Below, in pieces: positions 2,171 through 61,627 of a DNA stretch of 64,000 nt. A program made the translations under genes and the position numbers. The number at the start of each line of letters is the position of its first letter. Within the stretch, counting starts at the first letter, position 1. The DNA is from Octopus bimaculoides (taxonomy: Eukaryota): NCBI RefSeq assembly GCF_001194135.2, contig NC_068981.1, positions 15,009,849 through 15,073,848 on the forward strand, in the 5' to 3' direction. The notes below the pieces were generated by a model. It saw only the letters and a list, made by a program, of their open reading frames with translations, searched no databases and was not told the DNA's origin.

Positions 2171-4854
2171 CAATATCCAGTACCGCTTCCGTAGTCTCCT
2201 TTAGAGAAACTTAGAAATATTAATATTTCTATAAATTATTTACCTTCTATAGGAATGCATTCTTCTTTTTTTTGTTTTTGCAGACCGCTTTATTAGAGCC
2301 CTTATATCCACAGTCCAAAATATTTCAGCCGCAAACATTTGATACTTCTTCGGAAAGTATGAGATTCACGGTGTACTCCTGTTTCCATATCTGCTGCTGA
2401 TAAATATTAGAATTCGAAAATGTTGAATATGTATTACGCCGACTAAATGTCCATATCCTTTTTTGGCTTACAAAGACAAATGGCCACACATTCTGAAGGG
2501 TGTTATATTCGACATGACTATAGTTATTGGCATTCTGTTTCCTTGACCCAGAGAAATGTAATGCACGATGACTCTCTTCAGAATGAAGATGCATTGAACT
2601 AGATATCCCAATACTAAACTAAATATACTAAGTATTCTAATCCTATTGCATTTCATCGTACTCTCTAGCGATATTGGTAGTTTACCATCATACCATACCT
2701 AGGATAGTCGTCCCTTTACTGAAAAACGTATCAGCTTGTTGTTGACATTGTATAAGGAACCATTCCAACGCACATTTGATGACTTCTCGCTTCTCGTTTT
2801 CCTGAGAAAAGACAAATTAACTGACAGTGAAACTTGTAGCGAAACCGCTGGAGCGTTTAAGATACAACTAAAATTATTCCTCCTATGTTTCTACTTGGCA
2901 CTGAGCCAATTTCAGAGAGAATTAGTAAGCTGTGTCGTGCAGTTCAAGGCGTATCTGTCTCTGCCTGGCATCATCTTATACACCGTTTTATGCTAACCTC
3001 AAAACTGTTTTTCTATTTCGTTAAGCAACAAAATACAAATCGTTGACAATCCTACATTGTCTTCACCCCTTATTAGTTCTACTTAATTCGATTTAAGCAA
3101 TTACTAATGAATAATTACAAACGAATAAATTCACCGATATTCATTTAGTCTCATATGTGGTGATTCTAGTATCGCACCGTAATGTTTGCAATTATGGAAA
3201 ACATTATATTATAGCTCCTTTATCAACTTAAACAAAAGTATGTTCTGTACATTGTATGGAATATTTCTTTGTATTTAAAAGAGAAAATTAATGTCTTTCA
3301 AATGAATATCAGCATTGTGTTTCGGGTCTCTAAATATATTCTTAATCAAACAATGTTATTAATGATGTGGTCCCTCACAGGCATTTGCATTAAAATAGTG
3401 TTGATACCTTATTATCAATAAGTTCATCACATGACCAATTTCGTTGGATAAGCAATATAAATAAGAAACAACAGACGAATTAGATCGATTTAAATGCTAT
3501 GAATATCGATTTTTGTTTTCTACACAAAAGCACACAAAGAAGAAACGTATTCACCAAAGTAATCTGAGGAATTTGTATTTTGAGAAAAAATTACGAGAAA
3601 AATGAAATTAACTTTCGTATGTATAGAACACTAATTTATGCGCAATATAAAATGCGTTAGAACAGCATCATCAGCATCCTACTTATTGCAGCAAGACACA
3701 AGTCGAAAATGTTAAAATGAATGGTATTAGATATTAAAGGTCAGAGTTATATAGCAACTGGGAGTCTTCTCTGAAACTTCATTGAATTTCTGATTTCAGC
3801 AAATAATTAAATGTATGGTGCGATGATTAATAATGATCAAGATAGAGATAAGCAACTCATCTGTATTGATGCTAGTGCTCTTGTATTGTTATCTCATTGA
3901 CGTTATAGCATGCCATCACATATTGTTTTGATTTGTTCTGGCATATAATATCGGGAATTCCTATTGCCAATACTAATCTGAGATGACATCTCGAACTAGC
4001 CATTTGTTCGGATGTGAATTCGATTGGAAATACACTTGGAAATTAATGCCGGTCGGGAAATTCATATGATTTAAATTGCATATCTCACTAAATTTGCTAC
4101 TAATGGAAATTCTCCCTGTGGGAATTCATAACAATTATCTATAGAACAATAGGCCATTTATTTTTAGGCCACATTAACATGAATCATCAACCGAGTAAGT
4201 ATATTTGAAGTTTTACTCTAACTCCTATAATCTACATCAGTTGTTTATTAGAGTTATTTGGAAATTAGTTTGATAATGATCTTTGCTTCACATAGTCATT
4301 AGCAGACCAACACTAATCAGCAGAATGTGGAGAAAGCAAAATTATCTGTAGTATTCCTACTTGCTGAGACAGTGATGCGTTTTCAAATTCTTTCTTTGTA
4401 AGCATTTTGTTTCACTTGTGAACCTAATTTCATTGAAGGTGTTCTCGTTTCCCTTCCCTATAACATAGAATTCTCCGTTACAACGCAATTATCATTAAAT
4501 GGAATATAATAGCAGGATATATAACGAAAGCCATTCGAGTATTTATGTAGATATCTGAGTTAATAATGGTGTATCATCAACTCATTTGTATTAGAAAGTG
4601 TTGCCGTTCTGATAAATCAGGCAGTTAATTCATTTCCTGAAATTACATGCAGGGATTTCGCAGCATTTACATGCAAACGGTGCTGTTTTAAAACACTATA
4701 ATTTCGAATAAGTCTCGATGAAATTCTCAGTACAACTCTCATAAAATAATAGCAATTTCCAATTTCCCCGCTTATCTTCGAAATGATACACTCATTAAAT
4801 TTATTGCCAATAAAATACTACGTAATTTTAAAAATATTTTTTTTCTTCTTTTAT

Positions 4855-5065
4855 CTATTAATTGTTTCAGTCATTAGATTGCGGCCAAGCTGCTGCACAA
4901 CGTTGAATAAATTTTAGTCGAATGAATCGACCTCAGCATTTATTTTCTTTTAAAACTGATATTTATTCTATCAATGTATTATAATAAGTAGCCGGAACCT
5001 AAACACACCAGTACCGGTTGCCGAGCGATTGTGGGAGACAAACGCAGACATATAGGCACACACAC
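4855..5065 (-). mobile_element. SINE family A, 3' half
   Basis: TTGTTTCAGTCATTAGATTGCGGCC...AAACACACCAGTACCGGTTG is the reverse complement of the tail of the copy at 21897-22278; runs into (CA)/(TA) and a gap. Confidence 0.8.
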
Positions 5066-5379
5066 ACACATCATATATATANNNNNNNNNNNNNNNNNNN
5101 NNNNNNNNNNNNNNNNNNNNNNNNNNNNNNNNNNNNNNNNNNNNNNNNNNNNNNNNNNNNNNNNNNNNNNNNNNNNNNNNNNNNNNNNNNNNNNNNNNNN
5201 NNNNNNNNNNNNNNNNNNNNNNNNNNNNNNNNNNNNNNNNNNNNNNNNNNNNNNNNNNNNNNNNNNNNNNNNNNNNNNNNNNNNNNNNNNNNNNNNNNNN
5301 NNNNNNNNNNNNNNNNNNNNNNNNNNNNNNNNNNNNNNNNNNNNNNNNNNNNNNNNNNNNNNNNNNNNNNNNNNNNNNA

Positions 5380-6304: not shown

Positions 6305-7614
6305 CCATATCAACATATACACAAACAAAATCAGAAGCAGATTTTCTCTGACGAGGAAGGAAATAAACCAGAAGCCGCGGTCCACTGATATTACCTTATG
6401 CTGAGAGGGGGTGCTAAACTCTCCTGTTCGAAAATACAAGGTCATTTATATGTTATACTAAGTAACATAATCATAAAACATTTAGAATCTTCTTTAATTG
6501 AACAAATGTATGCGTTTTGTATATAATTTAAATAAAATATATTCTTTGTAGACGATCTGTGCCTCAGTAGTGTTATGTAGTTCCAAAATACAGCAAAAGA
6601 ATACAGTGTTGCATCACTAGATATGTATAGTTAACTATCAAATACGTCCATAATATTGTAATATTTATGTATACCATCTACTTCAGTTAAAGGTCAAGAA
6701 ATATGTGTTCAGGATAAATCAAACATATATCTGTGATTTATTTAAACGTATTTATTATGCCCTAAATCGAGAGACTCTTTTTTTACTATCAGCATGAAAA
6801 AAATAATTGGAATCAACCATTGATGTTTTTGTTGAGAGTATTCATACAGTATTTATGATGTGAACAACAGACACTTTATTATGTAGGGAAATTCATTATA
6901 ATTATTGAGATCAATGTTGTGATTTAGCCCGAAGACAACTTAGCTCTACCAAAGTTTTCAAAGTTGTACCTCTTTTGACTATCAATTATCTAGGATTTTA
7001 TTATTAAATAACCCCACCAATTTTTTTAAATACAGTAACTTGTTATTTGAGATAGAATTTCTTGTAATTTGTTTATTGAAGTTCGAATGCATGTGAATAA
7101 TAATGATTATACCAAGCTTTCAGCTCCCTTCCTAGATACCAAATATAAGTATTTTAAGTTGGATATGCATTAAACAGCATTTATTTTTACACAAAGTACT
7201 ATGTGGATGATATATATTGCATATGCATGCATGTTGTAAAAATTAAAAGCAATTTAATAATAGTTGATTTCATTATCCAAACAATTTCCAATGTTGAATT
7301 TATCTTCCCTGGTTGATGGTTTTGACATTTAACAATCCGAATTCGCAAACACGTTTTAACAGATATGATTTCGATTGATTATGCACCTGGCACACACAAA
7401 AACTAAGCGGTTTCAGGCTTTCGGATTTACAGGTGGAAATAACGACGGCTATGAGAATTAGTGAAGCGTAAACACAAAACTGTGTACCTGCCTAATTGCG
7501 ACTTCCGAAGATATAGACAAGTAGATGGATACACAGGTAGAAAGATAACTAAACTAGAATGAAAACAACTAGATATTCATGCTTATATCTACAAAATGTA
7601 TTCTTTTTATTTTT

Positions 7615-7900
7615 TCATTCTTTTGCTTGTTTCAGCCATTAAACTGCAGCCTTCCTGGGGCAAAGCCTTGAAAAATTGTATTCGAACGAATCGAAGCCAT
7701 TCCTTATTTCATTTTGTAAGACCCTTACTTATTCTATCAGAACCATGTGCCGACCGTATAGTTTACGAGGACGTAAACACAGCAACACCGATTGTCAAGT
7801 GTTAGTAGGGAACAAACGTTGACATAAACACGCGAAGGCACGCGCGCGTGCACAGGGGCACTCACACACACATTTACATATGTTCATATATATACATATG

Positions 7901-7948
<48 letters not shown>

Positions 7949-8120
7949 AACACATACACACATGTATATGTATGTATATTTCTGTCAATCAAATCCACTC
8001 CCACTGCTTTGGTTTGACCCGACGTCATGGTAAAAGACACCTAACAAAGTTACCCCATAGTGAGACTGAACCCTGAACCATGTGACTTGGAGGTACAATA
8101 CTTATTGCACATCTACACCT
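7615..8120 (-). mobile_element. SINE family A, full length, diverged
   Basis: Tail (7615-7830), internal (CA)/(TA) microsatellite and head (7975-8120) all align as reverse complement to 21897-22278. Confidence 0.8.
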
Positions 8121-14200: not shown

Positions 14201-16229
14201 CAGCTGTGGAATCATGCCTTTAAATTTTGTGTTTTTTCTAAATTTGTTATGGTCATGCGTCTCATAATGACGATAAATAGGACATTGGATTTGATTTGAA
14301 TGGCTTCTTGTGGGTGTGGAAGCTAAATGTGCAAAGCAGAGTGTGATATCCCGTGATGGTAAATGTTCCTTTTAATACAAATAATTCACGTCCTATATTG
14401 ATCTTGTTCACTTGTGTTTTATGTGCATTGAAGTCACTTTAATGATGGAGTATAAAGCATATAACATTTTTATAGTTTGGTATTGTAATCAGGTGTGACA
14501 GTTTGTAAGAATATGTAGTTAGCTTTTATCTTGAATACTTAAGATTAATATTAAATATTTAGTGATAGGAGCAATTAACGTCTAAGTAGAAATAACTGTG
14601 TCTTCAAATAGAAAAATAAAGACTTTTGACTGATATAATTTTAACTATTTCTCAAGTACGTAAAAATCAATTTGTAGAATGACACAGAAACTAAAACGCA
14701 CGTATCGAAGCTATGACTATGAATTCACTGAATAAGCGTTCAGTATTGAATATTAGTTGCCGTAGTAAAATACTATTGCTGAGAAAATTATAACAAAGGT
14801 TTCACGTTAAGGAAAAACAAAAGTGGAAGGAGATTGAGTATTTTTAATCATAAAACTTCATAGAAGTCACGTATCTCATCATGGAATATTGAATGTGTAT
14901 AACTATTGTCCTATTAGTGACTGAATGCAATTCATGTTGTGTGAGGCGTACCTGATTGAAAATCTTTCAAGTCGTTGGTACACGATGGTGTACACCGATG
15001 AACTATATGAGTAATCCTGTGTTAATCATATATATTTTAACTTGCTGAATAATGCCGATGTTACAATATTTTGTGATTATGATTTGACCCCAAAAAATAA
15101 TATTATTCTAAAACCATTTCAGGTACGTACGAATGTGGTGACATCATTATGTTACGTGCTGTACATTGCTTTCCGTTGTTGCGCTGCAGTGTATCCATGG
15201 TGCCTTATAGTGCACCTTTGTTTTGAGAATCCAAGGCACAAGTATGCAAACAATAATAAATCAAGTACTTCACAATTTCCTTGTTGAATTTCATAAACTC
15301 GAATGAAATTATGTTTCAAGAGTTAAGCTGCAATGCTACTGTTCCATTTTGGATCAGATGGCGCAAGTACAGCAAAAACTTATGACTATGAAAATCCTAG
15401 TTACTTCTAAGAAAGGCACATACTGTTATAGTTCACAAGCATGCATGCATGATATATATATATATATATATATATANNNNNNNNNNNNNNNNNNNNNNNN
15501 NNNNNNNNNNNNNNNNNNNNNNNNNNNNNNNNNNNNNNNNNNNNNNNNNNNNNNNNNNNNNNNNNNNNNNNNNNNNNNNNNNNNNNNNNNNNNNNNNNNN
15601 NNNNNNNNNNNNNNNNNNNNNNNNNNNNNNNNNNNNNNNNNNNNNNNNNNNNNNNNNNNNNNNNNNNNNNNNNNNNNNNNNNNNNNNNNNNNNNNNNNNN
15701 NNNNNNNNNNNNNNNNNNNNNNNNNNNNNNNNNNNNNNNNNNNNNNNNNNNNNNNNNNNNNNNNNNNNNNNNNNNNNNNNNNNNNNNNNNNNNNNNNNNN
15801 NNNNNNNNNNNNNNNNNNNNNNNNNNNNNNNNNNNNNNNNNNNNNNNNNNNNNNNNNNNNNNNNNNNNNNNNNNNNNNNNNNNNNNNNNNNNNNNNNNNN
15901 NNNNNNNTACTTATGCTTGAAAATAGATATTTTCGTTAGCTAAAATTGAAACTGCTAAATTTACTATGAATGTTTGACTTCCTAATTTTAGATGTCAAAG
16001 TAAATTCTATGTGTTACTTATTTTAGTGACTACCTGGCAGCGAAAAATCATGTGTTGCAAAATGGCTGTCAGCATATATCACAAACAAAATATCTTCGTT
16101 TCAAAAACGTATTCCCTCCGCCGAAACCTGCAGGCTTTAAACATAACAGCAATTTAATAGAAATACTAACCAATACCTAGCATTCTAATCAAAACCGCCA
16201 TTTGTTTTTTTTGGAGGACGCTCTACTCC

Positions 16230-16500: not shown

Positions 16501-16805
16501 AAGCGACTGTAAAACTCCTGAGCACCTGAAAAGATATATTCTCAGAAAATATTCTGATTCAACCTGATTCTCAGTCTTCAAAACACATGAAGATAAATAC
16601 ATTTGTGAGTTATTACGCACAGCAGAGATGAACTATATGACATAGGAATTTCACCAGATTTATACAAAACCTTTTGACTATGTTCCCTTAGCTTTTGTCT
16701 GGTTTTCTTCACTTGAAACTTGACTTCTTTTTGGTGTAGATAGGAAGAAGGATACTGCAGTTGAAACTTGTGTGTACTTTTTTTTTTATTTTTCATAATT
16801 CTATT

Positions 16806-17138
16806 CTTACTAACTTAATACCGCATTTTGCACTTGGAATTTCATATTTATCTTCGTGAAGAGTTTAGTCAATTTAAAAAATATCCTGGACTAAATGCGG
16901 TGCTCCAGCATGGTCACAGTCAAATGACTGAAACAAGTAAAAGAGTAAAGAGTATATTTGAAATATTGCTGAGCTAATCTGCATGTGTCTATATGTGTAC
17001 ATACAGGGTAGGTGTTAAATTTGCGTCTTGGCGAGTGTGTATTTAATTTTATTAGCATACCTTACTAACTTAATACCGCATTTTGCACTTGCAATTTCAT
17101 ATTTATCTTCGTGAAGAATTTAGTCAATTTAAAAAATA
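16806..17138. repeat. 78-bp direct duplication flanking a 177-bp copy of 22208-22384
   Basis: 16806-16883 and 17061-17138 differ at 2 positions; insert 16884-17060 matches 22208-22384 with 6 substitutions. Confidence 0.95.
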
Positions 17139-18167
17139 AATACATGAATAATAATGAAGTTTTAGTATTGTGATATAAGACTTTCATTTATAATACTCGA
17201 ATTTCTCCGCCTGAAGATATTTAACTTATAAAAGCGCAGCATTAAATTTAAATTAAATAAACAAAAAACAAGTAATCAGCAATATCTAACGATCTCTGGT
17301 TTGAATACCATAATATTTATAAAAGTGATTATAAAATTTATAATTCTCAGAACTACCACAAATATGTCTACGTATCTGAACTATAGAATAACTCGTTAAA
17401 AACTAGTTTATACAAGGGCAGAATGTTCTAAGTAATTCTAGATTATGCGATAATTACCCATTCACAAAATGTTGTCAGCGTGAAAATATGTATTTTACCT
17501 AAGTATAATTTGAATTAATAACATTCCTAAACTTTTATAAATGTTATATTTGTATTGTCGCCCATACTTTAATAAAATGAAAGTATTCAACTCGCCTGAT
17601 GAATACATATCAAAAGTAAAATATAACGATGAATATTTAACTTACAATGGTCTACATTAAATTCTTCTATAAGCAGATAGACAAGATTTTATATTCTATT
17701 TCATTAAAAAATAAATAAATGAAAGTTTGCAATTCACTGAATGCATTAATATTATTGAACTTTTTTTCCTAATTATACTAAACGAAACAGTAGCAGATTT
17801 AGTACCCAGGAAATGAATCATTATAAATTAGGTCATAATGGTAGCGACATCAACATAAATAACAATAATAATAAATCCATCGCCATAGAGCAATTTGCAT
17901 ATATTTAACTATTTTTTGTAATGTTGTTTATTCTATGCTGAATTTATTTTATTTATATTCAGTTTACATCATCATAAATTGTAGCATTAGTCTACGTTTC
18001 CATTTTCAGTTATTTTTTGTAAAATGCATTCCTGAATTCACTCTGTGTACTCGGCTGTATGTAAATGTATGTACATTTAGATTTATCTCTACTTATATAC
18101 AGATACTTGCTTATATTATTTTGTGCATATAATTATATATGCGCATCTATTATATTCGCATTCATCC

Positions 18168-18199
<32 letters not shown>

Positions 18200-19989
18200 T
18201 TGAACATGCATATATATATATATATATATATATATANNNNNNNNNNNNNNNNNNNNNNNNNNNNNNNNNNNNNNNNNNNNNNNNNNNNNNNNNNNNNNNN
18301 NNNNNNNNNNNNNNNNNNNNNNNNNNNNNNNNNNNNNNNNNNNNNNNNNNNNNNNNNNNNNNNNNNNNNNNNNNNNNNNNNNNNNNNNNNNNNNNNNNNN
18401 NNNNNNNNNNNNNNNNNNNNNNNNNNNNNNNNNNNNNNNNNNNNNNNNNNNNNNNNNNNNNNNNNNNNNNNNNNNNNNNNNNNNNNNNNNNNNNNNNNNN
18501 NNNNNNNNNNNNNNNNNNNNNNNNNNNNNNNNNNNNNNNNNNNNNNNNNNNNNNNNNNNATATATATATATATATATATAATATCTTTAATAGCATTTTG
18601 ACTCAGCTACAATTGACGAACCCACTCTGCTGTCAGAAGCACCTACATGTATCTTAGTCTAGCAGGGTACCAAATAATATACAAACATACACACAGACAT
18701 ATACATTTACATGTGTGGGTCAGTATGAGGTAGTGTGTTTGCATAAGCGTACATATCACTGTTTGGATTTATGACAGTTGTCTTCGCGACCAACAACCCA
18801 TCTTAATCTTAAGCTGATACATTTTATGTATATGAACTACTTGTATCTTATCCGTAATTTTCTCAGACCCTTCTCTTTAACAATTTTAAGTATATTGAGT
18901 TCTTCAATATTTAGTGCTTTACTATATTTAGAAGGACGCATTTGAAGAGATGTTTATTCAAGAAAGTAACTTAGCTTTCATTATGTTGCCTTTCACTTCT
19001 TTTGTATCTTTGTAGCATTTCTTACTGCATTGTGTATCTGTACTATGCTAGTTATATACAAATACATACACACAGAAACCCACATATACACACACACATG
19101 CACTCATAAATGTGTGTGTTATTTAATAAACACAATATACGATTTTATATGCTACTATTTGATTCATGTCTTTTGATCCTGCCGAACAGCGTTTTTTTAA
19201 CACTCCTGGTATCCTAGTACAATCATCAGCCATTGCTCACGTGGCATACCGAACGTATTTTGTTGATCATACCATCCCGGAACAGTAGGCTATGTACTAG
19301 GGTCTGACAAGACGTATGTAGAGCTGGGTGCTTTATGGACGCGAAGCCATGGTTAACCCAGTTAACCTGTCATGAATATGTATCTCTAAACATTCTACTG
19401 CTCTTTAATTTAGAGTGTGCTTCTCTTTGAATTTATTTTATGAATTTACTGATGATATGTGTGTATGTGTGTGTGCATGATGAATTTAATTCTAAAATAA
19501 GAACTTAGTCTTAACATTTTTTAGTAATGACTACAATTGTCTCGGTGCAACATTATCAGCTACTAAATGCTGAATGTTATAAATATTATCCTCATTATTG
19601 CATTAATATGACCCAACGAATGTAGCATAAATGCTAGTCTTCGGGTAAGTTAGGTCCAAAGAACTGTTAATCATCTTTAGTTTCTCTTTATATATACCTA
19701 CACAATTATACTATTTTTAGCTGTCCATTGACAAAGAACAATATGGAAATACAAAGATATATAAATGTGAAAATATATTATAAATAAATTAATGGTAATA
19801 AAAAAATAATAGATACAGAACCCCTTTTTTACTTCTTCCTTAATCGCAGACTTGTCCTGACAGTTAGGAAAATGAACGAGCAATCTAAGTTAATAAAGTG
19901 CTTAAATGATAAATTCGAACAATCGTTTCTCTCTGGGTCTTTTATCGATCCGCTTCAAAGGAAGTCAGAGGGAGCTATTTCTATTTTTT

Positions 19990-20205
19990 ATCTTTTACAT
20001 TTTTCAATCATTACACTGCAGCCATGGTTGGGCACCGCGTTGAAGAATTCTTATTCGAATGAATCTACCTCAGTACTTGTTTCTTGTAAGCCTGGTACTT
20101 ATTTTATCGACCAATTTTCACGAATCGGGAAGGTACGGGGACGTAAATACACCAACAACTTTGTCAAGCGGTGGTGAGGGACTAACGGAACACACTCACA
20201 CACAC
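19990..20205 (-). mobile_element. SINE family A, 3' half
   Basis: CTGCAGCCATGGTTGGGCACCGC...GGGGACGTAAATACACCAACAACTTTGTCAAGCGGTGG aligns to the reverse complement of the family A tail; runs into a gap. Confidence 0.8.
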
Positions 20206-20744
20206 NNNNNNNNNNNNNNNNNNNNNNNNNNNNNNNNNNNNNNNNNNNNNNNNNNNNNNNNNNNNNNNNNNNNNNNNNNNNNNNNNNNNNNNNNNNNNNN
20301 NNNNNNNNNNNNNNNNNNNNNNNNNNNNNNNNNNNNNNNNNNNNNNNNNNNNNNNNNNNNNNNNNNNNNNNNNNNNNNNNNNNNNNNNNNNNNNNNNNNN
20401 NNNNNNNNNNNNNNNNNNNNNNNNNNNNNNNNNNNNNNNNNNNNNNNNNNNNNNNNNNNNNNNNNNNNNNNNNNNNNNNNNNNNNNNNNNNNNNNNNNNN
20501 NNNNNNNNNNNNNNNNNNNNNNNNNNNNNNNNNNNNNNNNNNNNNNNNNNNNNNNNNNNNNNNNNNNNNNNNNNNNNNNNNNNNNNNNNNNNNNNNNNNN
20601 NNNNNNNNNNNNNNNNNNNNNNNNNNNNNNNNNNNNNNNNNNNNNNNNNNNNNNNNNNNNNNNNNNNNNNNNNNNNNNNNNNNNNNNNNNNNNNNNNNNN
20701 NNNNNNNNNNNNNNNNNNNNNNNNNNNNNNNNNNNNNTATATAC

Positions 20745-21896: not shown

Positions 21897-22278
21897 GGCG
21901 TAGGAGTGGCTGTTTGGTAAGTAGCTTGCTTAGGAACTACATGTTTCGGGGTTCAGTACCACTGCCTGGCACCTTGGGCAAGTGCCTTCTACCATATCCT
22001 CGGGTCGACGAAGCCTTGTGAGTGGATTTGGTAGANNNNNNNNNNTATATATATGTGGGGGTTGCGTGTATATGTTTGTGTGTCTGTGTTTGTTCCTCGC
22101 AACATCGCTTGACAACCGATGCTGGTGTCCCTGTAACTTAGCGGTTAGGCAAAAAAGACCGAAATAATAAGTACTAGGTTTACAAAGAATAAGACCTGGG
22201 GTCGATATCCTGGACTAAATGCAGTGCTCCAGCATGGCCACAGTCAAATGACTGAAACAAGTAAAAGAGTAAAGAGTA
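21897..22278 (+). mobile_element. SINE family A, full length (best copy)
   Basis: tRNA-like head GGCGTAGGAGTGGCTGTTTGGTAAG...GGGTTCAGTACC, internal (TA)/(TG) microsatellite with a 10-bp gap, tail ...CAGTCAAATGACTGAAACAAGTAAAAGAG; multiple copies in the window. Confidence 0.9.
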
Positions 22279-23844
22279 TATTTGAAATATTGCTGAGCTA
22301 ATCTGCATGTGTCTATATGTGTACATACAGGGTAGGGGTTAATTTTGCGTCTCGGCGAGTGTGTGTTTAATTTTATTAGCATACCTAATGATTCTGTCTT
22401 ATTCCGAAGAATTTCAAGACAATACGATGAAACCGCGATTTGTTCACTGACAAAATTCCGTACTGCTGAGATGCAACATGGAATTTTGTCAATGAACAAG
22501 TAAAGTTTTCAAAGCGACGAAAATATTTTGACAAATTAAATTTAAATGTTGAAGTCTATCTAACAGTTTTTGAATGTTTTTAAATGGCTTATAAAAACCT
22601 TCCACGCTGCAATTGTTTTGTTTCGACACACCATCTCTGATAAAGTCACCTGCTATGCAAGTACACCTCCGTAATATATACATATACACCCACCACACAC
22701 ACACAAGATACAAACATATATATGGTCTAATGACTTTAAATATTTGAAGTTTGACATTTATTTAATTTTACTTTGGTTTTTATATTTTATATTTTATATC
22801 ATTCAACTATGTAGTAGTTGAATAATATTCTTAAGGCCGCAATTTACTCACACGCAGTACTGGTGTCAAGCTACATTTTGCCATTAAGAATATCGAGATT
22901 TAGTCCAGTAGAAATAAGTGTACATCACAATTTGTAGCAACGTTATATGAGATTAAATAACGCCACCAACCAAGATTAAATCGAAATACCTATTTTTATT
23001 TTATAAGCAAAAACACAATTATCTTAGCTTTAATGATAGATGAAAGCATGACAAATGTTATAGCCTTCTTCCCATGCAGCAAAATCTTGTATCATAAAAG
23101 TTGTGAGGTAAGATATTATGAAAAAAATATAAGCAAGGCAAAAAATTGGATTTAAGCATAATTAACATTTTCATTTTGAAACAAACTATATTTTAGTTAA
23201 GCTTAAATGATAGTGCGGAATTAGAGGAATTTCATCGTACCAATCCCATGCAATGGGGTTTTAAAAGAAAAAAAAGTTATGAGCCTTTCTTTCTCAAATT
23301 TGAGAGTGATACTATACTTTTTTTATTAATATAGTTCTATAAGGTTACTTTTGATATATGTCACCGGCGTCATTGATCTAACGAAAAAAGTATCAATGAC
23401 ACCGCTAATTCACACATTTGTGGTATTATTAATTAGCATAATAGCATAGTCTTGAAAAAACATGGATTACATAGTAAAACGCGAGCAAGAGAAATAATAT
23501 TCTTAAGATTATAAACCTGGAAAAATTTAGGACAAGCTATTGCACTTGGAAAAGTTCAGAACAAATTATTACATCATGTAAAGTACAGAACAAGAAAATT
23601 TCTACTTAAAATATTGCAGCTAAGGATAAAACTTAAATATTATTAAAATTATTTGATCTTAATTTAGAAAGTAACATTATGATTAAATAAGGTGTCATCA
23701 TTTTGGTAAAATATTAACACACTAGAATACTTAAAAGATAACAGGCAGAAGTATCAATATAGCTAAAGTTTTATGCAAAGTACAATAGTATATATAGTAG
23801 GCAAATTCATTATGTAAAATAATAGACGTTGAGTCAAGACTAAA

Positions 23845-27214: not shown

Positions 27215-28650
27215 TAGATATGTTTCGACCAAAGACTGGTCCAGGCTATGTCTAACTTAATAAGATTATCTAAATCCTTTTTAAGTCAAGTTTTGTGTTA
27301 TTATGGTTCATTCAAGTTGAGCGAATTGTATCCAGTGATACGTGGCTTATCTCGTATTCTTTGAAAAAAAATCTGCCCAGACTCCGTTTAAATGTGATTG
27401 GATCCTTTTCTTCTTAGATCACTTTTGGGACAATGTTGAACAGGGCAGGGCTTGTTGAGGAAAAGAAATTATGTCGCAATATACCTATATGTTGTGATCC
27501 AGAATTGGGCAGGGAACGTATGGACCGTAGTCCCAGCCTTGGATGAACCTTGAAGCTAATGTTCAGGCCGTTTGGGTAATTCTGGCAGTATATCCTCCGA
27601 ATCGTGCAAATGATGTACCGCTCGCGGCGGTGCCGTAGAGAGTAGAGTTTCAAGGCTTTAAGGCAATCCCAAAAATCGAGATCAGTCATGCTCTTAATTC
27701 GTTTAGTGAACGCCATCTGAGGTGATTCAATTTTCGAGATGTTATGTTTTGTATGAAGAGACCACAAGGAGCAGCAGTATTCGAGGAACGGCCGTACAAA
27801 GAAGGAGAAAAGTGGAATGATGACACCTTGTTCTCTGGACCGGAAGGTTCTTAAGATCTAGGAGCTTATCCCACAAGCTATATTGACCTTATTGTTTATG
27901 TGGGCACTTCCACTGAGATTATTATCAACAATTACTCCTAGGTCTCTGATACTATTAGATGCTGTGAGCGGTTCCCCTGAAGGAAGAGTGTATGGCTGTT
28001 CTGTATAGTCTTTCTTCCAAAATGAATCAGCTCAAATGTTCCCTCGTTTAGTTGCATTTTATTTTTGTCTGCCCATTGACTGACTGGACTGCATACAGAT
28101 CAGAATGGAGTTGAGTTCGGTCTTCTTCTTCATTGATGATTTGCTGGAGCTTAGTGTAATCAGCAAATATTTTTTCTTTGCAATATTTTACGACGCTGGA
28201 AAGTTCGTTTATATAGATTAGAAAGTGGAGAAGCCCAAGACAGTCCTCTGAGTGGCACCACTGGTGACTTTTGGTGGGCTTCACTGGACTCCATCGACCA
28301 GAACATGTTGTGTTCTATTCGCCAGGAAATACTCAATCCAGTGTAGAAGTTTTCCACGGATTCCAACATTTGCAAATTATGAGAGTAAGATATTACGGTC
28401 AACCCTGTCGAACGCTTTACTGAAGTGAAGATATATGACATCAGAATTCAAACCTTGTCCCAAGGCTTTAAGTATATCCTCAATGTGGTGTAAGAGCTGT
28501 GTAAGACAGTCTCTGCCACAGCGAAAACCATGCAGATTTGCATTTAGGAGTTTGTAGATCTCCAGAAAACCAGCTATCCTTGATCTTATCACTCTTTCAA
28601 ACACTTTAATGATGTGGGAGGTAAGCGAGATTGGGCTTATAATTGACTGC
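27211..28650 (-). mobile_element. CR1-type LINE, 3' half of ORF2 (RT) plus 3' UTR, pseudogenised
   Basis: Colinear motifs across frames: PISLTSHIIKVFERVIR, HGFRCGRDCLTQLL, VIYLHFSKAFDRVD, FLIYINEL..IFADYTKL, IRDLGVIVDNNL, LEYCCSLWS, LYSLRHRRERYII; several stops and frameshifts; ends at a (TA)n tract. Confidence 0.92.
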
Positions 28651-28882
28651 CTTGGCAGAATTTGAACTCTGAACGTATCGGCAGACAATAATAATAGTTT
28701 CAAATTTTGCCACAAGGGCAGCCTTTTGGGGGAGGAATGATTCGATTAGATCAACCCCAGTGATTCAGGATAAAAAGCAAGTCGACATCGGCAGAATTTG
28801 GACTCGGAACGAAGCGGCAGAAAATTTACCGCTAAGCATGTTGCCCGGCGTGCTAACGATTCTGCAAGCTCGTCACCTTACT
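28650..28882 (-). mobile_element. SINE family B copy plus a short second head fragment at the LINE 5' junction
   Basis: GTCGACATCGGCAGAATTTGGACTCGGAACG...GCTAAGCATGTTGCCCGGCGTGCTAACGATTCTGCAAGCTCGTCACCTT matches the family B head reverse complement; a second GCAGAATTTGAACTCTGAACG fragment at ~28655-28680. Confidence 0.75.
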
Positions 28883-36640: not shown

Positions 36641-36939
36641 TATACTATTTTTATTCCTTTATAAACTGTGAATTCCCTGTCTAGAACTTCCATACATACT
36701 CACCTTGACATTGATGACGGAATACCCAGTGTATGGAGATGCTAACTAAATACTTGGGATATCCTCAAATCAGCTGTTAGAATCCAATAATTAATTAATT
36801 AACTCATTAATCAGTTAATTACTTTAAATACACCTCTCTCTGAATATTCTAAATAACGGGAGATACTCGTCCTGCCTCGGTTTTGTTGTCCACTTTGCTC
36901 TAACGCACACACATACACACACGCACACACACATACACA

Positions 36940-37080
36940 TCTTCCAGATCCACTCACGAAGCTTTGGTCAGACCGAAACCACAGAAGAGGATACTTACAC
37001 AAAGCCATGTAGTAGGACTGAACCTGGAGCCACACTTATCGGGAACAAGATTCTTTACCATAGAGACACCCCTATGCCTG
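36940..37080 (-). mobile_element. SINE family A head (inverted relative to the neighbouring tail)
   Basis: AGATCCACTCACGAAGCTTTGGTCAGACCG...GGACTGAACCTGGAGCCAC is the reverse complement of the head at 21897-22035. Confidence 0.75.
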
Positions 37081-37264
37081 TAAATATAAATATATGTGTG
37101 TGTGCGCGCACGCGAATGTATTTGAGCAAAATGTACAAAAAAACGAGGGTGGACGAGTATCTCAAATCATTTAAAATATTTAACTAGAGTAAGGTGTATA
37201 TGAGGCGTGTGGTGTGTGTATGTGTGTATGTGCGTGTGTATGCGTGCACGTGCTCACGTCTTTA

Positions 37265-37410
37265 TGTTCGTGTTTATCCCCGATCCACAGCTTTAGAACT
37301 GGTGCTGGCGTGTTCACGTCTCTGTAAATTAACAATTCGTGGAACTGATTCGCTATACTGAAGCCTTAAATGCGGTTACCTAGCATATCTGCTGACCATT
37401 GTCTGAATCA
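37265..37410 (+). mobile_element. SINE family A tail, diverged
   Basis: GTGTTTATCCCC...GGTGCTGGCGTGTTCACGTCTCTGTAAATTA aligns in plus orientation to 22085-22150. Confidence 0.6.
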
Positions 37411-38890
37411 TGTTATAGAGGAAAGATATATAATTGTACAAAAATACATTGATAAATTTGGCATAAAACTGCTTTTACTTGAGTGAAACATTCTTTGAGA
37501 GTATATTATAAAAGTTATATTATATATAATCCTTTCTATTGCAGCATATATAATGCATAACTTACGATTCCAAATTATCGCTGTTTGGTATTTAATAATT
37601 TACATTTATCAGCATTCAGTCACTTGCACATTTCTAGTGTTTAAGGTGAGAATATAAAATATAAGAAGCAATGCTAGGTTATTAATAAATAAAGAGGTCT
37701 TTAAACAAAATATTATCACTAATACATATATACGATTTATTCACAGAGTTTTATGTAATTTGCATGAATTAAAAGACAATTTTATGTGATTAATATAAAG
37801 TAAAATGTTTTAAGAATGTATGATTGATGGGGTTCATAGTAGATAGAATTGCACCTAGAACTTATTTAGTTGTATGCACATACATTAAATAGCAAATGGT
37901 GGAAAAGCTAAATTTATGCAACCAGATTCGATGAAGTACCTATCAATTATTAAGATTTTCGTAATTGATAATATTACTAGAAATGCTACAACATCATTCT
38001 AAACGAGGATTAACGATTTAAGAATATGGATCCTCTCTTCAGGTATATATATTAATGTTTCCTTCCAACACACACACACATACACACAGACAAAAACACA
38101 CGCATATAAGCACACAAACACCCACCAAAACAAACATGCACACACACACCGGAATTTATGTGTGTACATAAATTTAATTGGTGTGCACGCACACACCCGC
38201 ACATAGACACATATGTATGTGTATGTATGCATGTATGTATGTATATATGGTAAAAAAATTAATGAGTGTGTGCGTTACATAAATAATATTTTCAGGATTA
38301 AACAAAACGTGATTTGTGACGGCCTAAGGCGGTATCATTCTTTTTCCCGTTGCCTTCGGCGGACTGGTCATGATTTTCTGAGTTCCTCGCTCTAAGCATC
38401 CCGTGTTTATAGTCATTCAGGGCAGTTTTCATTTCTCCTACGGGGTACCCATTTTTTGGTATTGTCTTGGAGCCCTAAGTCTTTTTTGGTTGCTACATAT
38501 TAATTATTATTCTTTTAATTGTTGCCCTAAGCCTTAATTTTGTTTATTGTTTTGTCTCTCGTCTCTGATGCATCCCGTTTTGTTAAGCTTTGGTCCTATT
38601 ACTAGCACGTTTCGATAATGGCCGAAATTGCGCTTGACCGTCTGGCTGATAAGTAAAGAGGAGGTGATGAACTTCTGTGTTTTCTGTTCGTCTGTGTATT
38701 TAGTATATGTACAGGTTTTTTTTAATTATATGTGTGTGTGCGTGCGTGTNNNNNNNNNNNNNNNNNNNNNNNNNNNNNNNNNNNNNNNNNNNNNNNNNNN
38801 NNNNNNNNNNNNNNNNNNNNNNNNNNNNNNNNNNNNNNNNNNNNNNNNNNNNNNNNNNNNNNNNNNNNNNNNNNNNNNNNNNNNNNNNNN

Positions 38891-41154: not shown

Positions 41155-42030
41155 TTTAACGAAAAAAGAAGCTTATTTACCAAAGTTTTAACATCATCTG
41201 CTTCGCAATAGTAACATTGCGCAACAATACACCGGTCCTATCGTTCCTGCGCACTTTTGGAATCAAACCAGGAACTCGTTTTCCGTAAGCGAGTCGAAGA
41301 CCTTCTTCGATTCTCGCTGGATCTTGACAACGGTGGTAAAACAGTGAACTTCGAGCTGAGTTTACATCTTGAAAAAAAAAAAAAATAGAAGTCCGCAGGT
41401 GTTAAATCTAGTGAATAGTGTGGGTGTGGAAGTGATACCATGTTGCTTTTTGCGTGAAACTCACGAGGGATGGGAGCTTGGTGACAGAGTGCGTGAATCA
41501 TTCAGTACATCTGGTTCCATACATGCGGTCGCTTTCACCAAATGTCTCCGTCAGACGCTTCAAAATGTTGTTGATTGTCCTCGACGATCCTCATGCACAA
41601 GCTGATTAATTTTCTTCCAATTTCCGGGGGTGTCGCTCGTGGAATGTCCTCCAGATATTTCATCGTCTTCCGGGGACGTTCTTCCGCTTTTGAAGCGCTC
41701 GTGTCACTTGAAACTTTGCGTACAACCCATTGCATCATTGACGTAAGCTTGACGAAGCATCTTCAATATCTCTGTAGCAGACGTTCCAAGTTTACCGCAT
41801 AATTTCATGTGGGCTCTTTGTTCCAACTTCCTGTTTATGACAATAATCGTAGAGAACAGCTTACACGTTATCACAAAAAACACGAAAGTCACAACTTGTG
41901 AAGTAAACACAGCAATGTTGCTCGACACACTGCCTAATGAACGTCACTGCTAGTTCTCACTGCACACGCGACCGTGTGCCGCCATCTGTTGCCGCACTAC
42001 ATAGCTAGTCCGGGAAATTGTTGATACACA
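41155..42030 (-). mobile_element. Internally deleted mariner transposon
   Basis: Minus strand: N-terminal HTH (QRAHMKLCGKLGTSATEILKMLRQAY), HPHYSLDLTPADFYFF (YSPDL motif), C-terminal RCI; TIR-like GCTAGTCCGGGAAATTGTTGATACAC at ~42003-42028; other end lies in the gap; too short for an intact transposase. Confidence 0.88.
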
Positions 42031-43265: not shown

Positions 43266-43322
43266 CCCTTCAAGGAGGTTTCCCAGCATGGTGGCAGTCA
43301 AATGACTGGACAAATTAAAAGA
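43266..43322 (+). mobile_element. SINE family A 3' end
   Basis: CCCAGCATGGTGGCAGTCAAATGACTGG matches 22228-22256; remainder in gap. Confidence 0.65.
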
Positions 43323-43341
43323 TAAAATATAAAAGATACAC

Positions 43342-44234: not shown

Positions 44235-44505
44235 TTAGTCATCTATTTTGCGAATACATATCTCGCCAAAAAACAACATGGTATCTCTTCTACACCCTCC
44301 CTATTCACTAAATTTAACACTGTGGTCTTCTATTTCTTTTTCAAGAGGGAATCGCGGCTCAAACATCACTATTTTACCACCGTTGTCAAGATCCAGAGCG
44401 AATCGGAGAAGGTCTTCGAGTCGCTTACTTAAAACGAGTTCCTGGCCTGACTCCAAAAGTGCGCAGGGACGCTAGGACCGGTGTATTCTAGCTGTGCGAA
44501 TACTA
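44235..44505 (+). mobile_element. Mariner transposase C-terminal remnant (same family as 41155-42030)
   Basis: AKNNMVSLLHPPYSLNL; nucleotides 44360-44487 align to the reverse complement of 41227-41355. Confidence 0.85.
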
Positions 44506-47026: not shown

Positions 47027-50000
47027 NNNNNNNNNNNNNNNNNNNNNNNNNNNNNNNNNNNNNNNNNNNNNNNNNNNNNNNNNNNNNNNNNNNNNNNNNN
47101 NNNNNNNNNNNNNNNNNNNNNNNNNNNNNNNNNNNNNNNNNNNNNNNNNNNNNNNNNNNNNNNNNNNNNNNNNNNNNNNNNNNNNNNNNNNNNNNNNNNA
47201 TATATATATATATATATATAGACGCAGGCGATATGTACACACGCGCATACACACAGACAGACAGACACACAGACGTGCACACCCACAGACACAAACACAG
47301 AAGGCAGACAGACAGATACACACACTCACACACACAAGCACACACACACACACAAGCACACACACACACACACGCACACGTGTGTGTGTGTGTGTGAGTG
47401 AGTGTGTGTGTGTGTGTGTGTGTGCACGTATACCAACGCGCATTAGAGCTTATATGTNNNNNNNNNNNNNNNNNNNNNNNNNNNNNNNNNNNNNNNNNNN
47501 NNNNNNNNNNNNNNNNNNNNNNNNNNNNNNNNNNNNNNNNNNNNNNNNNNNNNNNNNNNNNNNNNNNNNNNNNNNNNNNNNNNNNNNNNNNNNNNNNNNN
47601 NNNNNNNNNNNNNNNNNNNNNNNNNNNNNNNNNNNNNNNNNNNNNNNNNNNNNNNNNNNNNNNNNNNNNNNNNNNNNNNNNNNNNNNNNNNNNNNNNNNN
47701 NNNNNNNNNNNNACACACTCACACACACAAGCACACACACACACACAAGCACACACACACACACACGCACACGTGTGTGTGTGTGTGTGTGAGTGAGTGT
47801 GTGTGTGTGTGTGTGCACGTATACCAACGCGCATTAGAGCTTATATGTGCATCTGCATGAGTAAGAACGAGGGCGATTAGGACTGAAATTCAATGCAAAT
47901 AGTAGATTAATAGATTTTAAAAACGAAATTTCAGTGTTTGAATAATAGTTTAGTTATTTTTCCGAAGCGTTAAGGATGAATTGAACATGTACTGTTAATG
48001 ATATTGAGTAAAATAAAAAAAATAAATAAATAAATAATCTCGTGAAGATACGACAATCAAATGAATTAATCTGCCATTTGTTTCGCTTGGTGTTTACATC
48101 GAGTACTACGCGAATGCCTGGTGGTTGCATGTGATATAACATTTGATAAACAACGAAATATATATAAAACTTTTTGATGCTCTTGTTAAGTCCAAACGAT
48201 CAATGTTATTTGGAATGTTAATCTGTTGACCTCGGATGAAAGTAGTGAGCGATGGTTTCACAGCAAATGATGGTATCAAAGGGACAGTTATCTCTCACGT
48301 GAGAAATGACTTGATTGTTGATATTTATGATTGTTTGGAAGGTGGCGAAGGGATAATATTTACTTGAAGAGCGGAAGGAAGAGATTTATTACCAGGGTAA
48401 TTGGAAATCTATTGATAGTCCATCGAGGATATGTCGAGTCCACAGATATTACTGGAGAATAATGGTAATTGTACATTGGATTATAGTATTGCGCACAAAT
48501 ATTTCTGCCTTTAAAGAGATTCTAGTGCGCGTATTCCACTCTTCTCTACCTAGGAAGTTAGAAATACGCATAAACCCTGATGTGAAAACTCATATTACAT
48601 TGATTTTTAAGGCCACCGACCTTGAAAGTATGTCTGCCTCTTTTTCCATTGTTTTACTTTTTTTTTTTTTCACAAATACTTAGTTTTGGCTGTCTGAACT
48701 AAATCGCAATTTTGCGTATTTATCGAGGCAGATCGCGTATGCCTCTCTCGTTTTCCTGCGAGTGTGAGCTTGTATGTGCATGTGTATTGCAATGTAAATG
48801 TATCGCAATGTAAGTATCAACGTGTTTCTTTCGTACATAATCACATAAATGTTCGTTTGAAAATCACAGGAAAGGCCGAATGCCTGACGGTTGACAATGT
48901 GTAACAGATTATGTTGATGGTGCTCATTATTAGCTGTAGTAGTAGTTGCTTTTTATTAATATCGTGTTTACGGTTAAAGTTTCAGTTGGACAAATTAGCC
49001 ATTACGTTTCTCCTGCATGAGACAGCAAGTTGTGATTTGACGGATATTTGGCCGCAAATGTGCCTCTAATTAAAAGCTTTATTGTTTATGGTGTGTTTTC
49101 AGATATTGTTTATGCATGTTTGGAGAGTTTCACTTAAAAGAGCATTGATTATATACCTTCTCTATACTAAGGCTTACAGAGAAATAATAAATATATTTGT
49201 TTTAAGGAAATTATCACACATGGATATTGACTGTCTGGAAATTATAGCATTCGTTTCTGTTTAATGAAGTAAAGTTTATTCCTGATACATTGAAAAATGG
49301 GTTAGCTAATTATTTCTTTATTAATCAAGCAGAATGAAACGTGACTAAAGAAGTCATCCTAGAACGAAATTTGGCGACGTCTATCGGAGGCTATGAAATG
49401 AATGTACATCACAATCAGGACCGTAATGATTATTTGTTCAACAATTTAAACTAGAGATAAATGTTTAAATAAAATCACTGATAAAGCCATCTGTCTTTCG
49501 AATATATGAATGTGTATATACATTATTTAAATTTTGCAACAGATAATGTCTCCTGGCTAAAGACACTGACAATCTAAGAATTTCTACTAACAATAAACAA
49601 ATAGGAGTCGAACAAATATTTTTAGACTGGAATGGAAACTGATTTTGAGAAGAGAATAAAGAATGTGGAAAATGTATTTATACGAGTTATGCACAGTCAT
49701 TCAAAGCAAATATTTATCAAGCAATTCGCAAGAAACTATTCACTACTGTGACATCTGCTTTTATGTGATTTTTTTTCAAAGGAGAGGGAGCGAGAGATAG
49801 GGAGAGACAGACAGACAGAATGAAAGACAGAGTGAAAAATTTAAACATTGATTAAAGAAAGAAAATAGCAGGGGAAAGATGCTACATTTAATCTAATTAT
49901 TTATTTTTATGCGGTATCTAAAGAACTTTAAGAAATTTTCTCACATTAGCATTAGTTCCAAAATGTGTTATGTTCTTCAAAATAGTTTTAAACGGTGATT

Positions 50001-51094: not shown

Positions 51095-51245
51095 TGAAAG
51101 TAATGCTTCCGCAGCCCTTGCTTCCGGGGTAATTCTTACCGCGTGGTACCTTGGCCAGGTGTTTTCTGCTATTGCCTCGAGCTTACCGAAGCTTTGTGAG
51201 TGGATTTCATTGACAGAAACTGAAAGAATCCCGTTGTATACATGC
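51095..51245 (+). mobile_element. SINE family A head
   Basis: GCGTGGTACCTTGGCCAGGTG...GCTTTGTGAGTGGATTTC...GAAACTGAAAGAATCCCG matches 21960-22035; followed by (TA)n and the hammerhead-bearing repeat. Confidence 0.7.
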
Positions 51246-61434: not shown

Positions 61435-61593
61435 ATAAGTGTGACTGCGAAGTAGGAAGTTTGCCTCCGAATCTCATCGTACCGGATTCAGCCCTATCCC
61501 GTGGTTAATTGGGCATGTATCTTCTACAATGCTTTCGAGCCGACTAAACCTTGCGAGTAGATTTTGAATACAGAAACAGAAAGTAAATCCACA

Positions 61594-61627
<34 letters not shown>

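What the first reader, a model, noticed from the sequence alone, without database searches (positions are those of the whole stretch)
16806..17138. Templated insertion: 177 bp copied from 5.3 kb downstream, bracketed by a 78-bp duplication with microhomology at both junctions
Seen: A(16806-16883)-insert(16884-17060)-A'(17061-17138). The insert equals 22208-22384 (6 substitutions) and spans the end of a SINE plus about 105 bp of its unique flank, so it is not a SINE retroposition. Left junction shares ATA with donor 22205-22207; right junction shares CT with donor 22385-22386; no poly-A. Established: jump-and-return copying with 2-3-bp microhomologies and a tandem duplication is the signature of replication template switching (FoSTeS/MMBIR) or polymerase-theta-mediated repair. 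Inference: a fixed germline repair scar; donor/insert (6/177) and duplicate (2/78) divergences are similar, consistent with one event.
Basis: partly seen in the sequence, partly recalled or inferred. Interest (0 to 1): 0.7.

Follow-up and report, generated by a model that had tools for sequence, protein, structure and literature searches.

The report
Local templated insertion repair scar
A 177-base stretch was copied from about 5 kb downstream and pasted between two copies of a 78-base target sequence, which is the ordinary, well-known footprint of error-prone DNA break or replication repair, here seen cleanly in a probable cephalopod genome.

Summary
A (16806-16883) and A' (17061-17138) match at 76/78 positions. 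The 177 bp between them match 22208-22384 at 171/177 without gaps. ATA is shared at the left junction and CT at the right.

The insert is the last ~70 bp of an old tRNA-type SINE plus ~107 bp of that copy's own flank. Neither this flank nor A has any other copy in the window. The insert also carries a ~10-bp deletion private to the donor SINE, so it came from that locus or a very close paralogue.

There is no poly-A, no polyadenylation signal and no transcript-end signal at the insert's 3' end. The flanks share no homology beyond the microhomologies (joint chance about 0.002). The structure lies about 900 bp or more from any assembly gap.

Best explanation, about 0.75: DNA-level, microhomology-primed copy-and-return template switching, either MMBIR/FoSTeS-type or polymerase-theta-type repair of a staggered break. 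Insert length and donor distance favour the replicative version.

Not testable here: read support, the empty allele in relatives, and genome-wide copy number of the flank. I found no independent sequence for this locus.

It is a known kind of mutation, so interest is low to moderate.

The parts
16806..16883 (.). A: left copy of the duplicated target site (78 bp). Its last 3 bases, ATA (16881-16883), are also present at donor 22205-22207 (left-junction microhomology).
   Evidence: family D6, 97% to A'; single-copy elsewhere in the window
16884..16953 (+). Insert, part 1: copy of the last ~70 bp of the donor SINE's 3' tail, including the donor's private ~10-bp deletion.
   Evidence: weak hits (65-80%) to other SINE copies cover only this part
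16954..17060 (+). Insert, part 2: copy of ~107 bp of the unique flank downstream of the donor SINE.
   Evidence: (the flank-only query hits just 22280-22384 and 16956-17060)
17061..17138 (.). A': right copy of the duplicated target site. Its first 2 bases, CT (17061-17062), are also present at donor 22385-22386 (right-junction microhomology).
22205..22386 (+). Donor tract: 22208-22384 copied, plus ATA (22205-22207) and CT (22385-22386) shared with the recipient junctions.
   Evidence: family D3, 182 nt, 97%
21898..22277 (+). Donor SINE: tRNA-type head with a B-box-like GGTTCAGTACC, an internal 10-N gap at 22036-22045, and a tail ending ...GTAAAAGAGTAAAGAG. The copied tract starts inside it at 22208. 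Both ends are approximate.
   Evidence: alignments A1 and A2; self-BLAST

Best explanation
This is a DNA-level templated insertion made by two microhomology-primed template switches.

A growing 3' end had just copied, or ended at, the right edge of A (...AAAAAATA). It left its template and paired through ATA with the same strand about 5.3 kb downstream, inside an old SINE. It was extended for 177 nt across the SINE's 3' end into unique flank. It then let go again and re-paired through CT with the left edge of A, so A was copied a second time. The result is A-insert-A', with the donor left intact.

Shown: the anatomy, the copy direction (donor to recipient), the microhomologies, the absence of longer homology, and the absence of retroposition hallmarks.

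Inferred: the enzymology. A 177-nt tract taken from kilobases away fits replicative repair of a collapsed or stalled fork (MMBIR/FoSTeS) better than typical polymerase-theta end joining. Polymerase-theta inserts are usually short and copied from right beside the break. Repair of a break with ~78-nt complementary 3' overhangs, with one end extended on the distant template before joining, gives the same product and is not excluded. My rough split within the 0.75 is two thirds replicative and one third end joining.

The ~3% divergence, with changes on both the insert and donor lineages, implies an old, inherited event.
For: - Exact anatomy.
- The insert crosses the SINE/flank boundary, and the flank is single-copy in the window.
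- The insert shares the donor SINE's private deletion.
- Microhomology is ATA plus CT, with joint chance 0.0016-0.0018.
- No extended homology in 120 bp on either side. The left flanks are at shuffle level; the right has only a marginal off-junction match at p about 0.05.
- The donor lies in cis, in the same orientation, about 5 kb away.
- Of the two differences that can be polarised against other SINE copies, the insert keeps the family-consensus G at 16899 where the donor now has A (CpG to CpA). The insert has a derived T at 16914. Substitutions therefore accumulated on both copies after the event.
- Literature: FoSTeS/MMBIR junctions show 0-6-bp microhomology and templated insertions from 7 bp to 13 kb (PMC5120786). 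Tandem duplications equal to 3' overhangs, near full length and with microhomology when made by polymerase theta, are reported in PMC8355091. Templated inserts occur as heritable scars in natural C. elegans isolates (PMC4490562).
Against: - No read-level or second-assembly confirmation could be obtained. The window is a gap-rich draft with 18 N-gaps.
- The genome-wide copy number of the 107-bp flank is unknown, so a third, closer donor locus cannot be excluded.
- Ascertainment: only donors inside the same 64-kb window could have been noticed. This weakens the proximity argument against genome-wide mechanisms.
- The equal-divergence argument for a single event has no statistical power.
- 3-bp and 2-bp microhomologies are also seen in other joining pathways.
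Confidence: 0.75

Rival explanations
1. RNA-mediated insertion. A transcript running from the donor SINE into its flank was reverse-transcribed at the recipient site. This could happen by LINE target-primed reverse transcription (a 5'-truncated SINE with 3' transduction, as in a class 1 templated sequence insertion), or as a cDNA or RNA patch at a break (class 2).
For: - The tract starts inside a SINE whose head has a B-box-like motif, so it may be transcribed.
- It is flanked by a target-site duplication.
- 5' truncation with microhomology is usual for LINE-mediated inserts (my own knowledge).
- A degraded LINE reverse-transcriptase fragment lies in the window at 27414-28715.
- RNA-derived templated insertions are documented in humans (PMC5110952).
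Against: - No poly-A or LINE-type tail, and no AATAAA.
- The tract runs through two T4 runs (22344-22347 and 22369-22372) and ends 12 nt past the second, so its end is not a Pol III terminator.
- The SINE's own 3' tail, the part a partner LINE would recognise, is internal to the insert rather than at its end.
- A 78-bp duplication is far longer than usual target-site duplications.
- A donor 5 kb away in cis and in the same orientation is not expected for a diffusible RNA, although detection bias tempers this point.
Confidence: 0.08
2. Assembly artefact. The A-insert-A' arrangement was created by contig extension or gap closing in a short-read draft and does not exist in the animal.
For: - The window is a draft with 18 N-gaps and 4800 N.
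- It contains at least one clear assembly-type duplication, with overlapping contig ends either side of the gap at 47458-47712.
- The SINE-derived part of the insert is repetitive.
- The donor lies within mate-pair distance.
Against: - The structure lies inside one contig (15908-18236), 899 bp and 1099 bp from the nearest gaps.
- The copies differ by point substitutions including transversions: 2/78 and 6/177. At one site the insert keeps the ancestral base that the donor has lost. The insert therefore cannot simply be donor reads placed in the wrong spot.
- The gap-edge duplicate differs only in microsatellite length.
- Junction overlaps of 2-3 bp are far below any assembler's overlap requirement.
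Confidence: 0.07
3. Two independent events: a 177-bp insertion and a separate duplication of the 78-bp unit, or a tandem duplication later interrupted exactly at its junction.
For: The divergence figures (2.6% and 3.4%) cannot distinguish one event from two of similar age.
Against: - The insert sits exactly at the A|A' boundary and both junctions are clean. A second event landing precisely there would be a coincidence.
- Single-event models give this product directly.
Confidence: 0.05
4. The 177-bp unit is itself a small multi-copy mobile element that inserted with its own target-site duplication.
For: It is flanked by direct repeats. I found no further support.
Against: - Only two copies exist in 64 kb. 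One of them is colinear with a full SINE upstream, so the unit's 5' end is an arbitrary point inside another element.
- No terminal inverted or direct repeats were reported at the unit's ends.
- A 78-bp duplication fits no known transposase or integrase.
Confidence: 0.03

Closest known systems
FoSTeS/MMBIR templated insertions at duplication junctions (human constitutional rearrangements; PMC5120786)
   Same: - The donor is retained, so this is a copy and not a cut.
- 2-3-bp microhomology at both switch points.
- A templated tract of tens to thousands of bp taken from a nearby locus.
- Copy-number gain at the return point.
- No long homology.
   Different: - The scale is tiny: a 78-bp duplication and a 177-bp insert, against the kb-Mb rearrangements usually reported.
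- It is an old, diverged scar in a non-model invertebrate rather than a de novo event.
- Replication dependence cannot be shown.
Polymerase-theta-mediated end joining with templated inserts, and small tandem duplications from breaks with 3' overhangs (PMC4490562, PMC8355091)
   Same: - Microhomology-primed extension of a 3' end on another template, followed by release and re-annealing.
- A tandem duplication equal to the staggered overhang.
- Heritable scars of this type occur in natural populations.
   Different: - Reported inserts are short and copied from sequence in close proximity to the break. Here the tract is 177 nt, copied from about 5.3 kb away.
- A natural source of ~78-nt complementary 3' overhangs is hypothetical.
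Templated sequence insertion polymorphisms (TSIPs) of the human genome (PMC5110952)
   Same: A short stretch templated from elsewhere is inserted with the donor intact. Class 1 has target-site duplications and class 2 has microhomology.
   Different: - TSIPs are RNA-derived and come from distant, seemingly random loci.
- Class 1 has poly-A, a polyadenylation signal and a TTTT/A target; none of these are present here.
- Class 2 lacks target duplications, whereas this insert has a 78-bp one.
SINE retroposition or 3' transduction
   Same: The insert contains a SINE 3' end and is flanked by direct repeats.
   Different: - The SINE tail is internal to the insert.
- 107 bp of unique flank follows it.
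- There is no tail at the insert's end.
- The duplication is several times longer than usual.

Membership tests
Replicative template switching (FoSTeS/MMBIR) scar | The inserted tract is a copy of sequence that remains intact at its source | tested here: met
   171/177 identity with no gaps; the donor remains colinear with its SINE
Replicative template switching (FoSTeS/MMBIR) scar | Short microhomology at each switch junction and no long homology | tested here: met
   ATA and CT, joint chance about 0.002; flank alignments at shuffle level
Replicative template switching (FoSTeS/MMBIR) scar | Return to the original template with a copy-number change at the return point | tested here: met
   78-bp tandem duplication bracketing the insert
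Replicative template switching (FoSTeS/MMBIR) scar | Arises during replication or break-induced replication (fork collapse, Pol delta/Pol32-type synthesis) | not testable with these tools
   Sequence alone cannot show this
Polymerase-theta end joining with templated insert | Microhomology at the junctions | tested here: met
Polymerase-theta end joining with templated insert | The insert is short and templated from sequence immediately flanking the break | tested here: not met
   177 nt copied from about 5.3 kb away. [quoted passage not shown]
Polymerase-theta end joining with templated insert | Dependence on POLQ | not testable with these tools
   Needs genetics
LINE-mediated retroposition (SINE copy, 3' transduction, class 1 TSIP) | Target-site duplication | tested here: inconclusive
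   A duplication is present, but at 78 bp it is well beyond the usual range. Typical lengths for this genome's LINEs could not be measured. The donor SINE's own duplication is no longer detectable.
LINE-mediated retroposition (SINE copy, 3' transduction, class 1 TSIP) | Poly-A or LINE/SINE-type tail at the 3' junction; a polyadenylation signal or terminator at the transcript end | tested here: not met
   The insert ends ...TTTTATTAGCATAC. There is no A-run and no AATAAA, the T4 runs are internal, and the SINE tail is internal.
Small mobile element with its own target duplication | Multiple copies sharing the same two ends; terminal repeats | tested here: not met
   Only two copies in the window, and one is continuous with a SINE upstream. 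No terminal repeats. The genome-wide count is not testable here.
Assembly artefact (unmerged contig ends or gap filling) | Lies at a gap edge; copies identical apart from slippage or error | tested here: not met
   899 bp and 1099 bp from the nearest gaps. Differences are point substitutions, with the ancestral state kept in the insert. Contrast the gap-edge duplicate at 47320-47848.
Assembly artefact (unmerged contig ends or gap filling) | No reads span the junctions | not testable with these tools
   No reads and no second assembly could be reached

The most novel reading that the evidence does not exclude
The patch was copied from a nascent or read-through transcript of the donor SINE locus acting in cis, that is, RNA-templated or reverse-transcriptase-assisted break repair, rather than from DNA. 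A broader version: long local templated insertions are a systematic, non-retropositional route by which SINE fragments and their flanks are spread in this genome, inflating repeat-fragment counts.
Probability: 0.07. Interest if true: 0.55.

Novelty: new member of a known kind. Interest (0 to 1): 0.25.

Why it matters
On its own this is a neutral scar in AT-rich non-coding DNA and has no evident function. It has three modest uses.

- It is an unusually clean natural example of a two-switch templated insertion. Donor, recipient, both microhomologies and the duplicated target are all still legible.
- It shows that SINE fragments in this genome can be moved by DNA repair as well as by retroposition. 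That matters for repeat annotation and for dating by fragment counts.
- It gives a search template: A-B-A with B mapping within a few kb. A genome-wide scan with it could measure how much template-switch repair has contributed to a lineage known for heavy repeat content and rearrangement.

My literature search found no paper combining cephalopods, template switching and microhomology.

Tried and rejected
Independent sequence for the locus. All of these returned nothing, so read support, the empty allele and genome-wide copy number remain untested.
- Exact-protein look-ups of four ORFs: two in or across the structure (16891-17058 minus strand; 16828-16977 plus strand, which spans the left junction), one in the left flank (16578-16796 minus strand) and one over the donor (22215-22499 minus strand). 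None is on record.
- A homology search with the 94-aa donor ORF found no hit.
- Exact-pattern scans of metagenome contigs with a 36-mer from the donor flank and a 31-mer from A found no hit.

Other checks that found nothing:
- Rfam and tRNA scans of the window, run to name the SINE.
- A search for the donor SINE's own target-site duplication, intended to fix its exact ends and give a typical duplication length.

Explanations considered and rejected:
- Homology-driven recombination or gene conversion. No homology exists beyond 2-3 bp.
- Helitron-like capture. The insert begins A|TC, but it has no CTRR end and no 3' hairpin, and Helitrons make no target duplication (read).
- Reverse direction of copying. 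The donor tract is continuous with a complete SINE, and the recipient carries the duplication.
- Pol III read-through transcript. There is no terminator at the tract's end.

Not done:
- I ran no further search on identifying the organism through the LINE fragment.

Full report

Yes. I read 16600-17400 and 21900-22700 and recomputed the comparisons.

- A (16806-16883) and A' (17061-17138) are identical at 76 of 78 positions. They differ at 16837/17092 (G/C) and 16863/17118 (G/A).
- The 177 bp between them (16884-17060) align without gaps to 22208-22384 at 171/177.
- The repeat finder reports the second pair as 182 nt (16881-17062 vs 22205-22386). This is because ATA precedes the tract and CT follows it at both places.
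- Outside these limits the sequences do not match, so the boundaries are sharp.
- In a whole-window self-BLAST the two pairs have E-values of 1e-82 and 2e-31. They are two of only seven non-trivial repeat pairs in 64 kb.

Two details need qualifying. The 5.3-kb spacing crosses three N-gaps (18237-18559, 20206-20737, 22036-22045), so it is an estimate. Because of the shared bases, the duplicated target is 73-78 bp and the copied tract 177-182 bp, depending on how those bases are assigned.

**2. What is the inserted sequence?**

The donor lies at the 3' end of a SINE with a tRNA-type head. The head starts at about 21898 and has a B-box-like GGTTCAGTACC.

I aligned six other copies of this SINE family from the window: 4847-5081, 19982-20204 and 7559-7831 on the minus strand, and 37350-37431, 43272-43326 and 61792-61835 on the plus strand. 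They share the tail ...ATGACTGAAACAAGTAAAAGA(TAAAAGA)n and diverge immediately after it. This places the donor SINE's end at about 22277.

The insert is therefore ~70 bp of SINE tail (16884-16953) followed by ~107 bp of that particular copy's flank (16954-17060).

- A BLAST query made only of the flank (22280-22384) hits nothing in the window except itself and the insert. A hits only A and A'.
- The donor SINE has a ~10-bp deletion (GACTA----------AATGC) that none of the other copies has. The insert has it too.

The insert was therefore copied from this locus, or from a very close paralogue I cannot see. It is not an independent SINE retroposition.

The direction is donor to recipient. The donor tract is continuous with the rest of its SINE, whereas the recipient has only the fragment and carries the target duplication.

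**3. Junctions**

The left junction shares ATA and the right shares CT. With the window's base composition (34% G+C), the chance of at least 3 matching bases on one side and at least 2 on the other is 0.0016 analytically and 0.0018 by random sampling of window positions.

Local alignment of the 120 bp on the outer side of each junction shows nothing beyond this. The left flanks score at shuffle level. The right shows only a marginal match (p about 0.05) that lies about 95 bp from the junction. Homology-driven recombination is excluded, and microhomology is the only pairing available.

**4. Retroposition hallmarks**

- The insert ends ...TTAATTTTATTAGCATAC. It has no A-run, no AATAAA and no short-repeat tail.
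- The two T4 runs that could stop RNA polymerase III (22344-22347 and 22369-22372) are inside the copied tract. The tract continues 12 nt past the second.
- The SINE's own 3' tail, which a partner LINE would need to recognise, is internal to the insert.
- A 78-bp target duplication is several times the usual length.
- Human class 1 templated sequence insertions require a target duplication, poly-A, a polyadenylation signal and a TTTT/A target. Class 2 insertions lack target duplications (PMC5110952). This insert fits neither class.
- A degraded LINE reverse-transcriptase fragment exists at 27414-28715 on the minus strand, so reverse transcriptase was once available in this genome. That is only permissive.

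**5. Could it be an assembly artefact?**

The window is a gap-rich draft with 18 gaps and 4800 N. It does contain an assembly-type duplication. The sequence 47320-47457 ends exactly at a gap and is repeated at 47713-47848, starting exactly after that gap. The two copies differ only in microsatellite length. That is a pair of overlapping, unmerged contig ends.

The structure under study differs in kind.

- It lies inside one contig (15908-18236), 899 bp and 1099 bp from the nearest gaps.
- Its copies differ by point substitutions, including transversions.
- Two differences fall in the SINE part and can be polarised against the other family members. At 16899 the insert keeps the consensus G where the donor (22223) now has A, a CpG-to-CpA change. 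At 16914 the insert has a derived T.
- Changes have therefore accumulated on both copies since the copying. Misplaced donor reads cannot produce this, and it implies an old, inherited event.

I could not obtain reads or a second assembly. Four exact ORF look-ups, one homology search and two metagenome scans all returned nothing. I leave about 7% for an artefact.

**6. Mechanism**

The simplest account is a copy-and-return. A 3' end at the right edge of A pairs through ATA with the same strand about 5 kb downstream. It is extended for 177 nt, dissociates, and re-pairs through CT at the left edge of A. A is then copied again.

- This is the iterative template switching described for FoSTeS/MMBIR. 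Those junctions show 0-6-bp microhomology and templated insertions from 7 bp to 13 kb (PMC5120786).
- An end-joining version gives the same product. A break with ~78-nt complementary 3' overhangs yields a tandem duplication of the overhang. Duplications made by polymerase theta are near full length and show junctional microhomology (PMC8355091). One end would have to be extended on the distant template before joining.
- Polymerase-theta templated inserts are described as copies of sequence in close proximity to the break (PMC4490562). A 177-nt tract from 5 kb away is atypical for that pathway, so I favour the replicative version about two to one. Sequence cannot settle this.
- DNA folding shows no unusual structure at the recipient site or at the donor's start.
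- A strong hairpin (22440-22499, z = -4.35) lies 55 bp beyond the donor's end. It might have hindered synthesis, but the distance makes that speculative.

The better argument for a single event is that the insert sits exactly at the A|A' boundary.

**7. Ascertainment**

A donor could only have been noticed if it lay inside the same 64-kb window. Proximity is therefore weaker evidence against a genome-wide (RNA) mechanism than the raw odds suggest. It still counts, together with the same orientation and the missing retroposition hallmarks.

**8. Comparison with what is known, and novelty**

This is a new example of a known class of mutation, scaled down from the kb-Mb rearrangements in which the class was defined. 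I found no paper combining cephalopods, template switching and microhomology, so it may be undescribed in this group.

The organism itself was not verified.

A specialist would not be surprised by it. Its value lies in being a clean exemplar, a caution for repeat annotation, and a template for a genome-wide scan.

**9. Verdict**

| Explanation | Probability |
|---|---|
| DNA-level local templated insertion by microhomology-primed template switching | 0.75 |
| RNA-mediated insertion | 0.08 |
| Assembly artefact | 0.07 |
| Two separate events | 0.05 |
| Mobile unit with its own target duplication | 0.03 |

Interest is 0.25.

Noticed in passing
window 47320-47457 and 47713-47848 (gap 47458-47712): A ~138-bp sequence ends exactly at the start of an N-gap and is repeated starting exactly after it. 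The copies differ only in microsatellite length. This looks like two overlapping contig ends that were not merged, so the gap is probably spurious.
   Followed up: partly
window 22440-22499: A near-perfect ~24-bp-arm hairpin (TTGTTCACTGACAAAATTCC...GGAATTTTGTCAATGAACAA). As DNA it folds at -19.9 kcal/mol with z = -4.35 against shuffles. It lies 55 bp downstream of the end of the donor tract. It could be a small palindromic element or a polymerase obstacle.
   Followed up: partly
window 27414-28715, minus strand: Broken ORFs from a degraded non-LTR retrotransposon. There is a weak Pfam RVT_1 match (E = 7e-5, below the gathering score) with an FSKAFDRVDRNILL motif. Frameshifts separate the pieces.
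   Followed up: partly
window 41226-41452 and 44267-44487: A 227-bp inverted repeat pair at 85% identity, about 2.8 kb apart. These may be two copies of an unclassified repeat in opposite orientation.
   Followed up: no
window 4847-5081(-), 7559-8120(-), 19982-20204(-), 36903-37431, 43272-43326(+), 51093-51207(+), 61484-61835(+): Multiple old copies (about 65-80% identity) of the same tRNA-headed SINE family. Several are cut by N-gaps or microsatellites. The family tail is (TAAAAGA)n-like rather than poly-A.
   Followed up: partly
window 15452-15476, 18211-18235 and several other gap edges: In the gap-spanning translations, many of the N-gaps are bordered by (TA)n or (CA/GT)n microsatellite-like sequence. 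The contig breaks therefore seem to reflect short-read failure at simple repeats rather than complex structure.
   Followed up: no
window 17115-17140 vs 22480-22504: Marginal similarity (GAATTTAGTCAAT... vs GAATTTTGTCAAT...; 20 of 25 aligned columns with one gap; shuffle p about 0.05) between the end of A' and the right arm of the hairpin downstream of the donor. It is probably chance.
   Followed up: no
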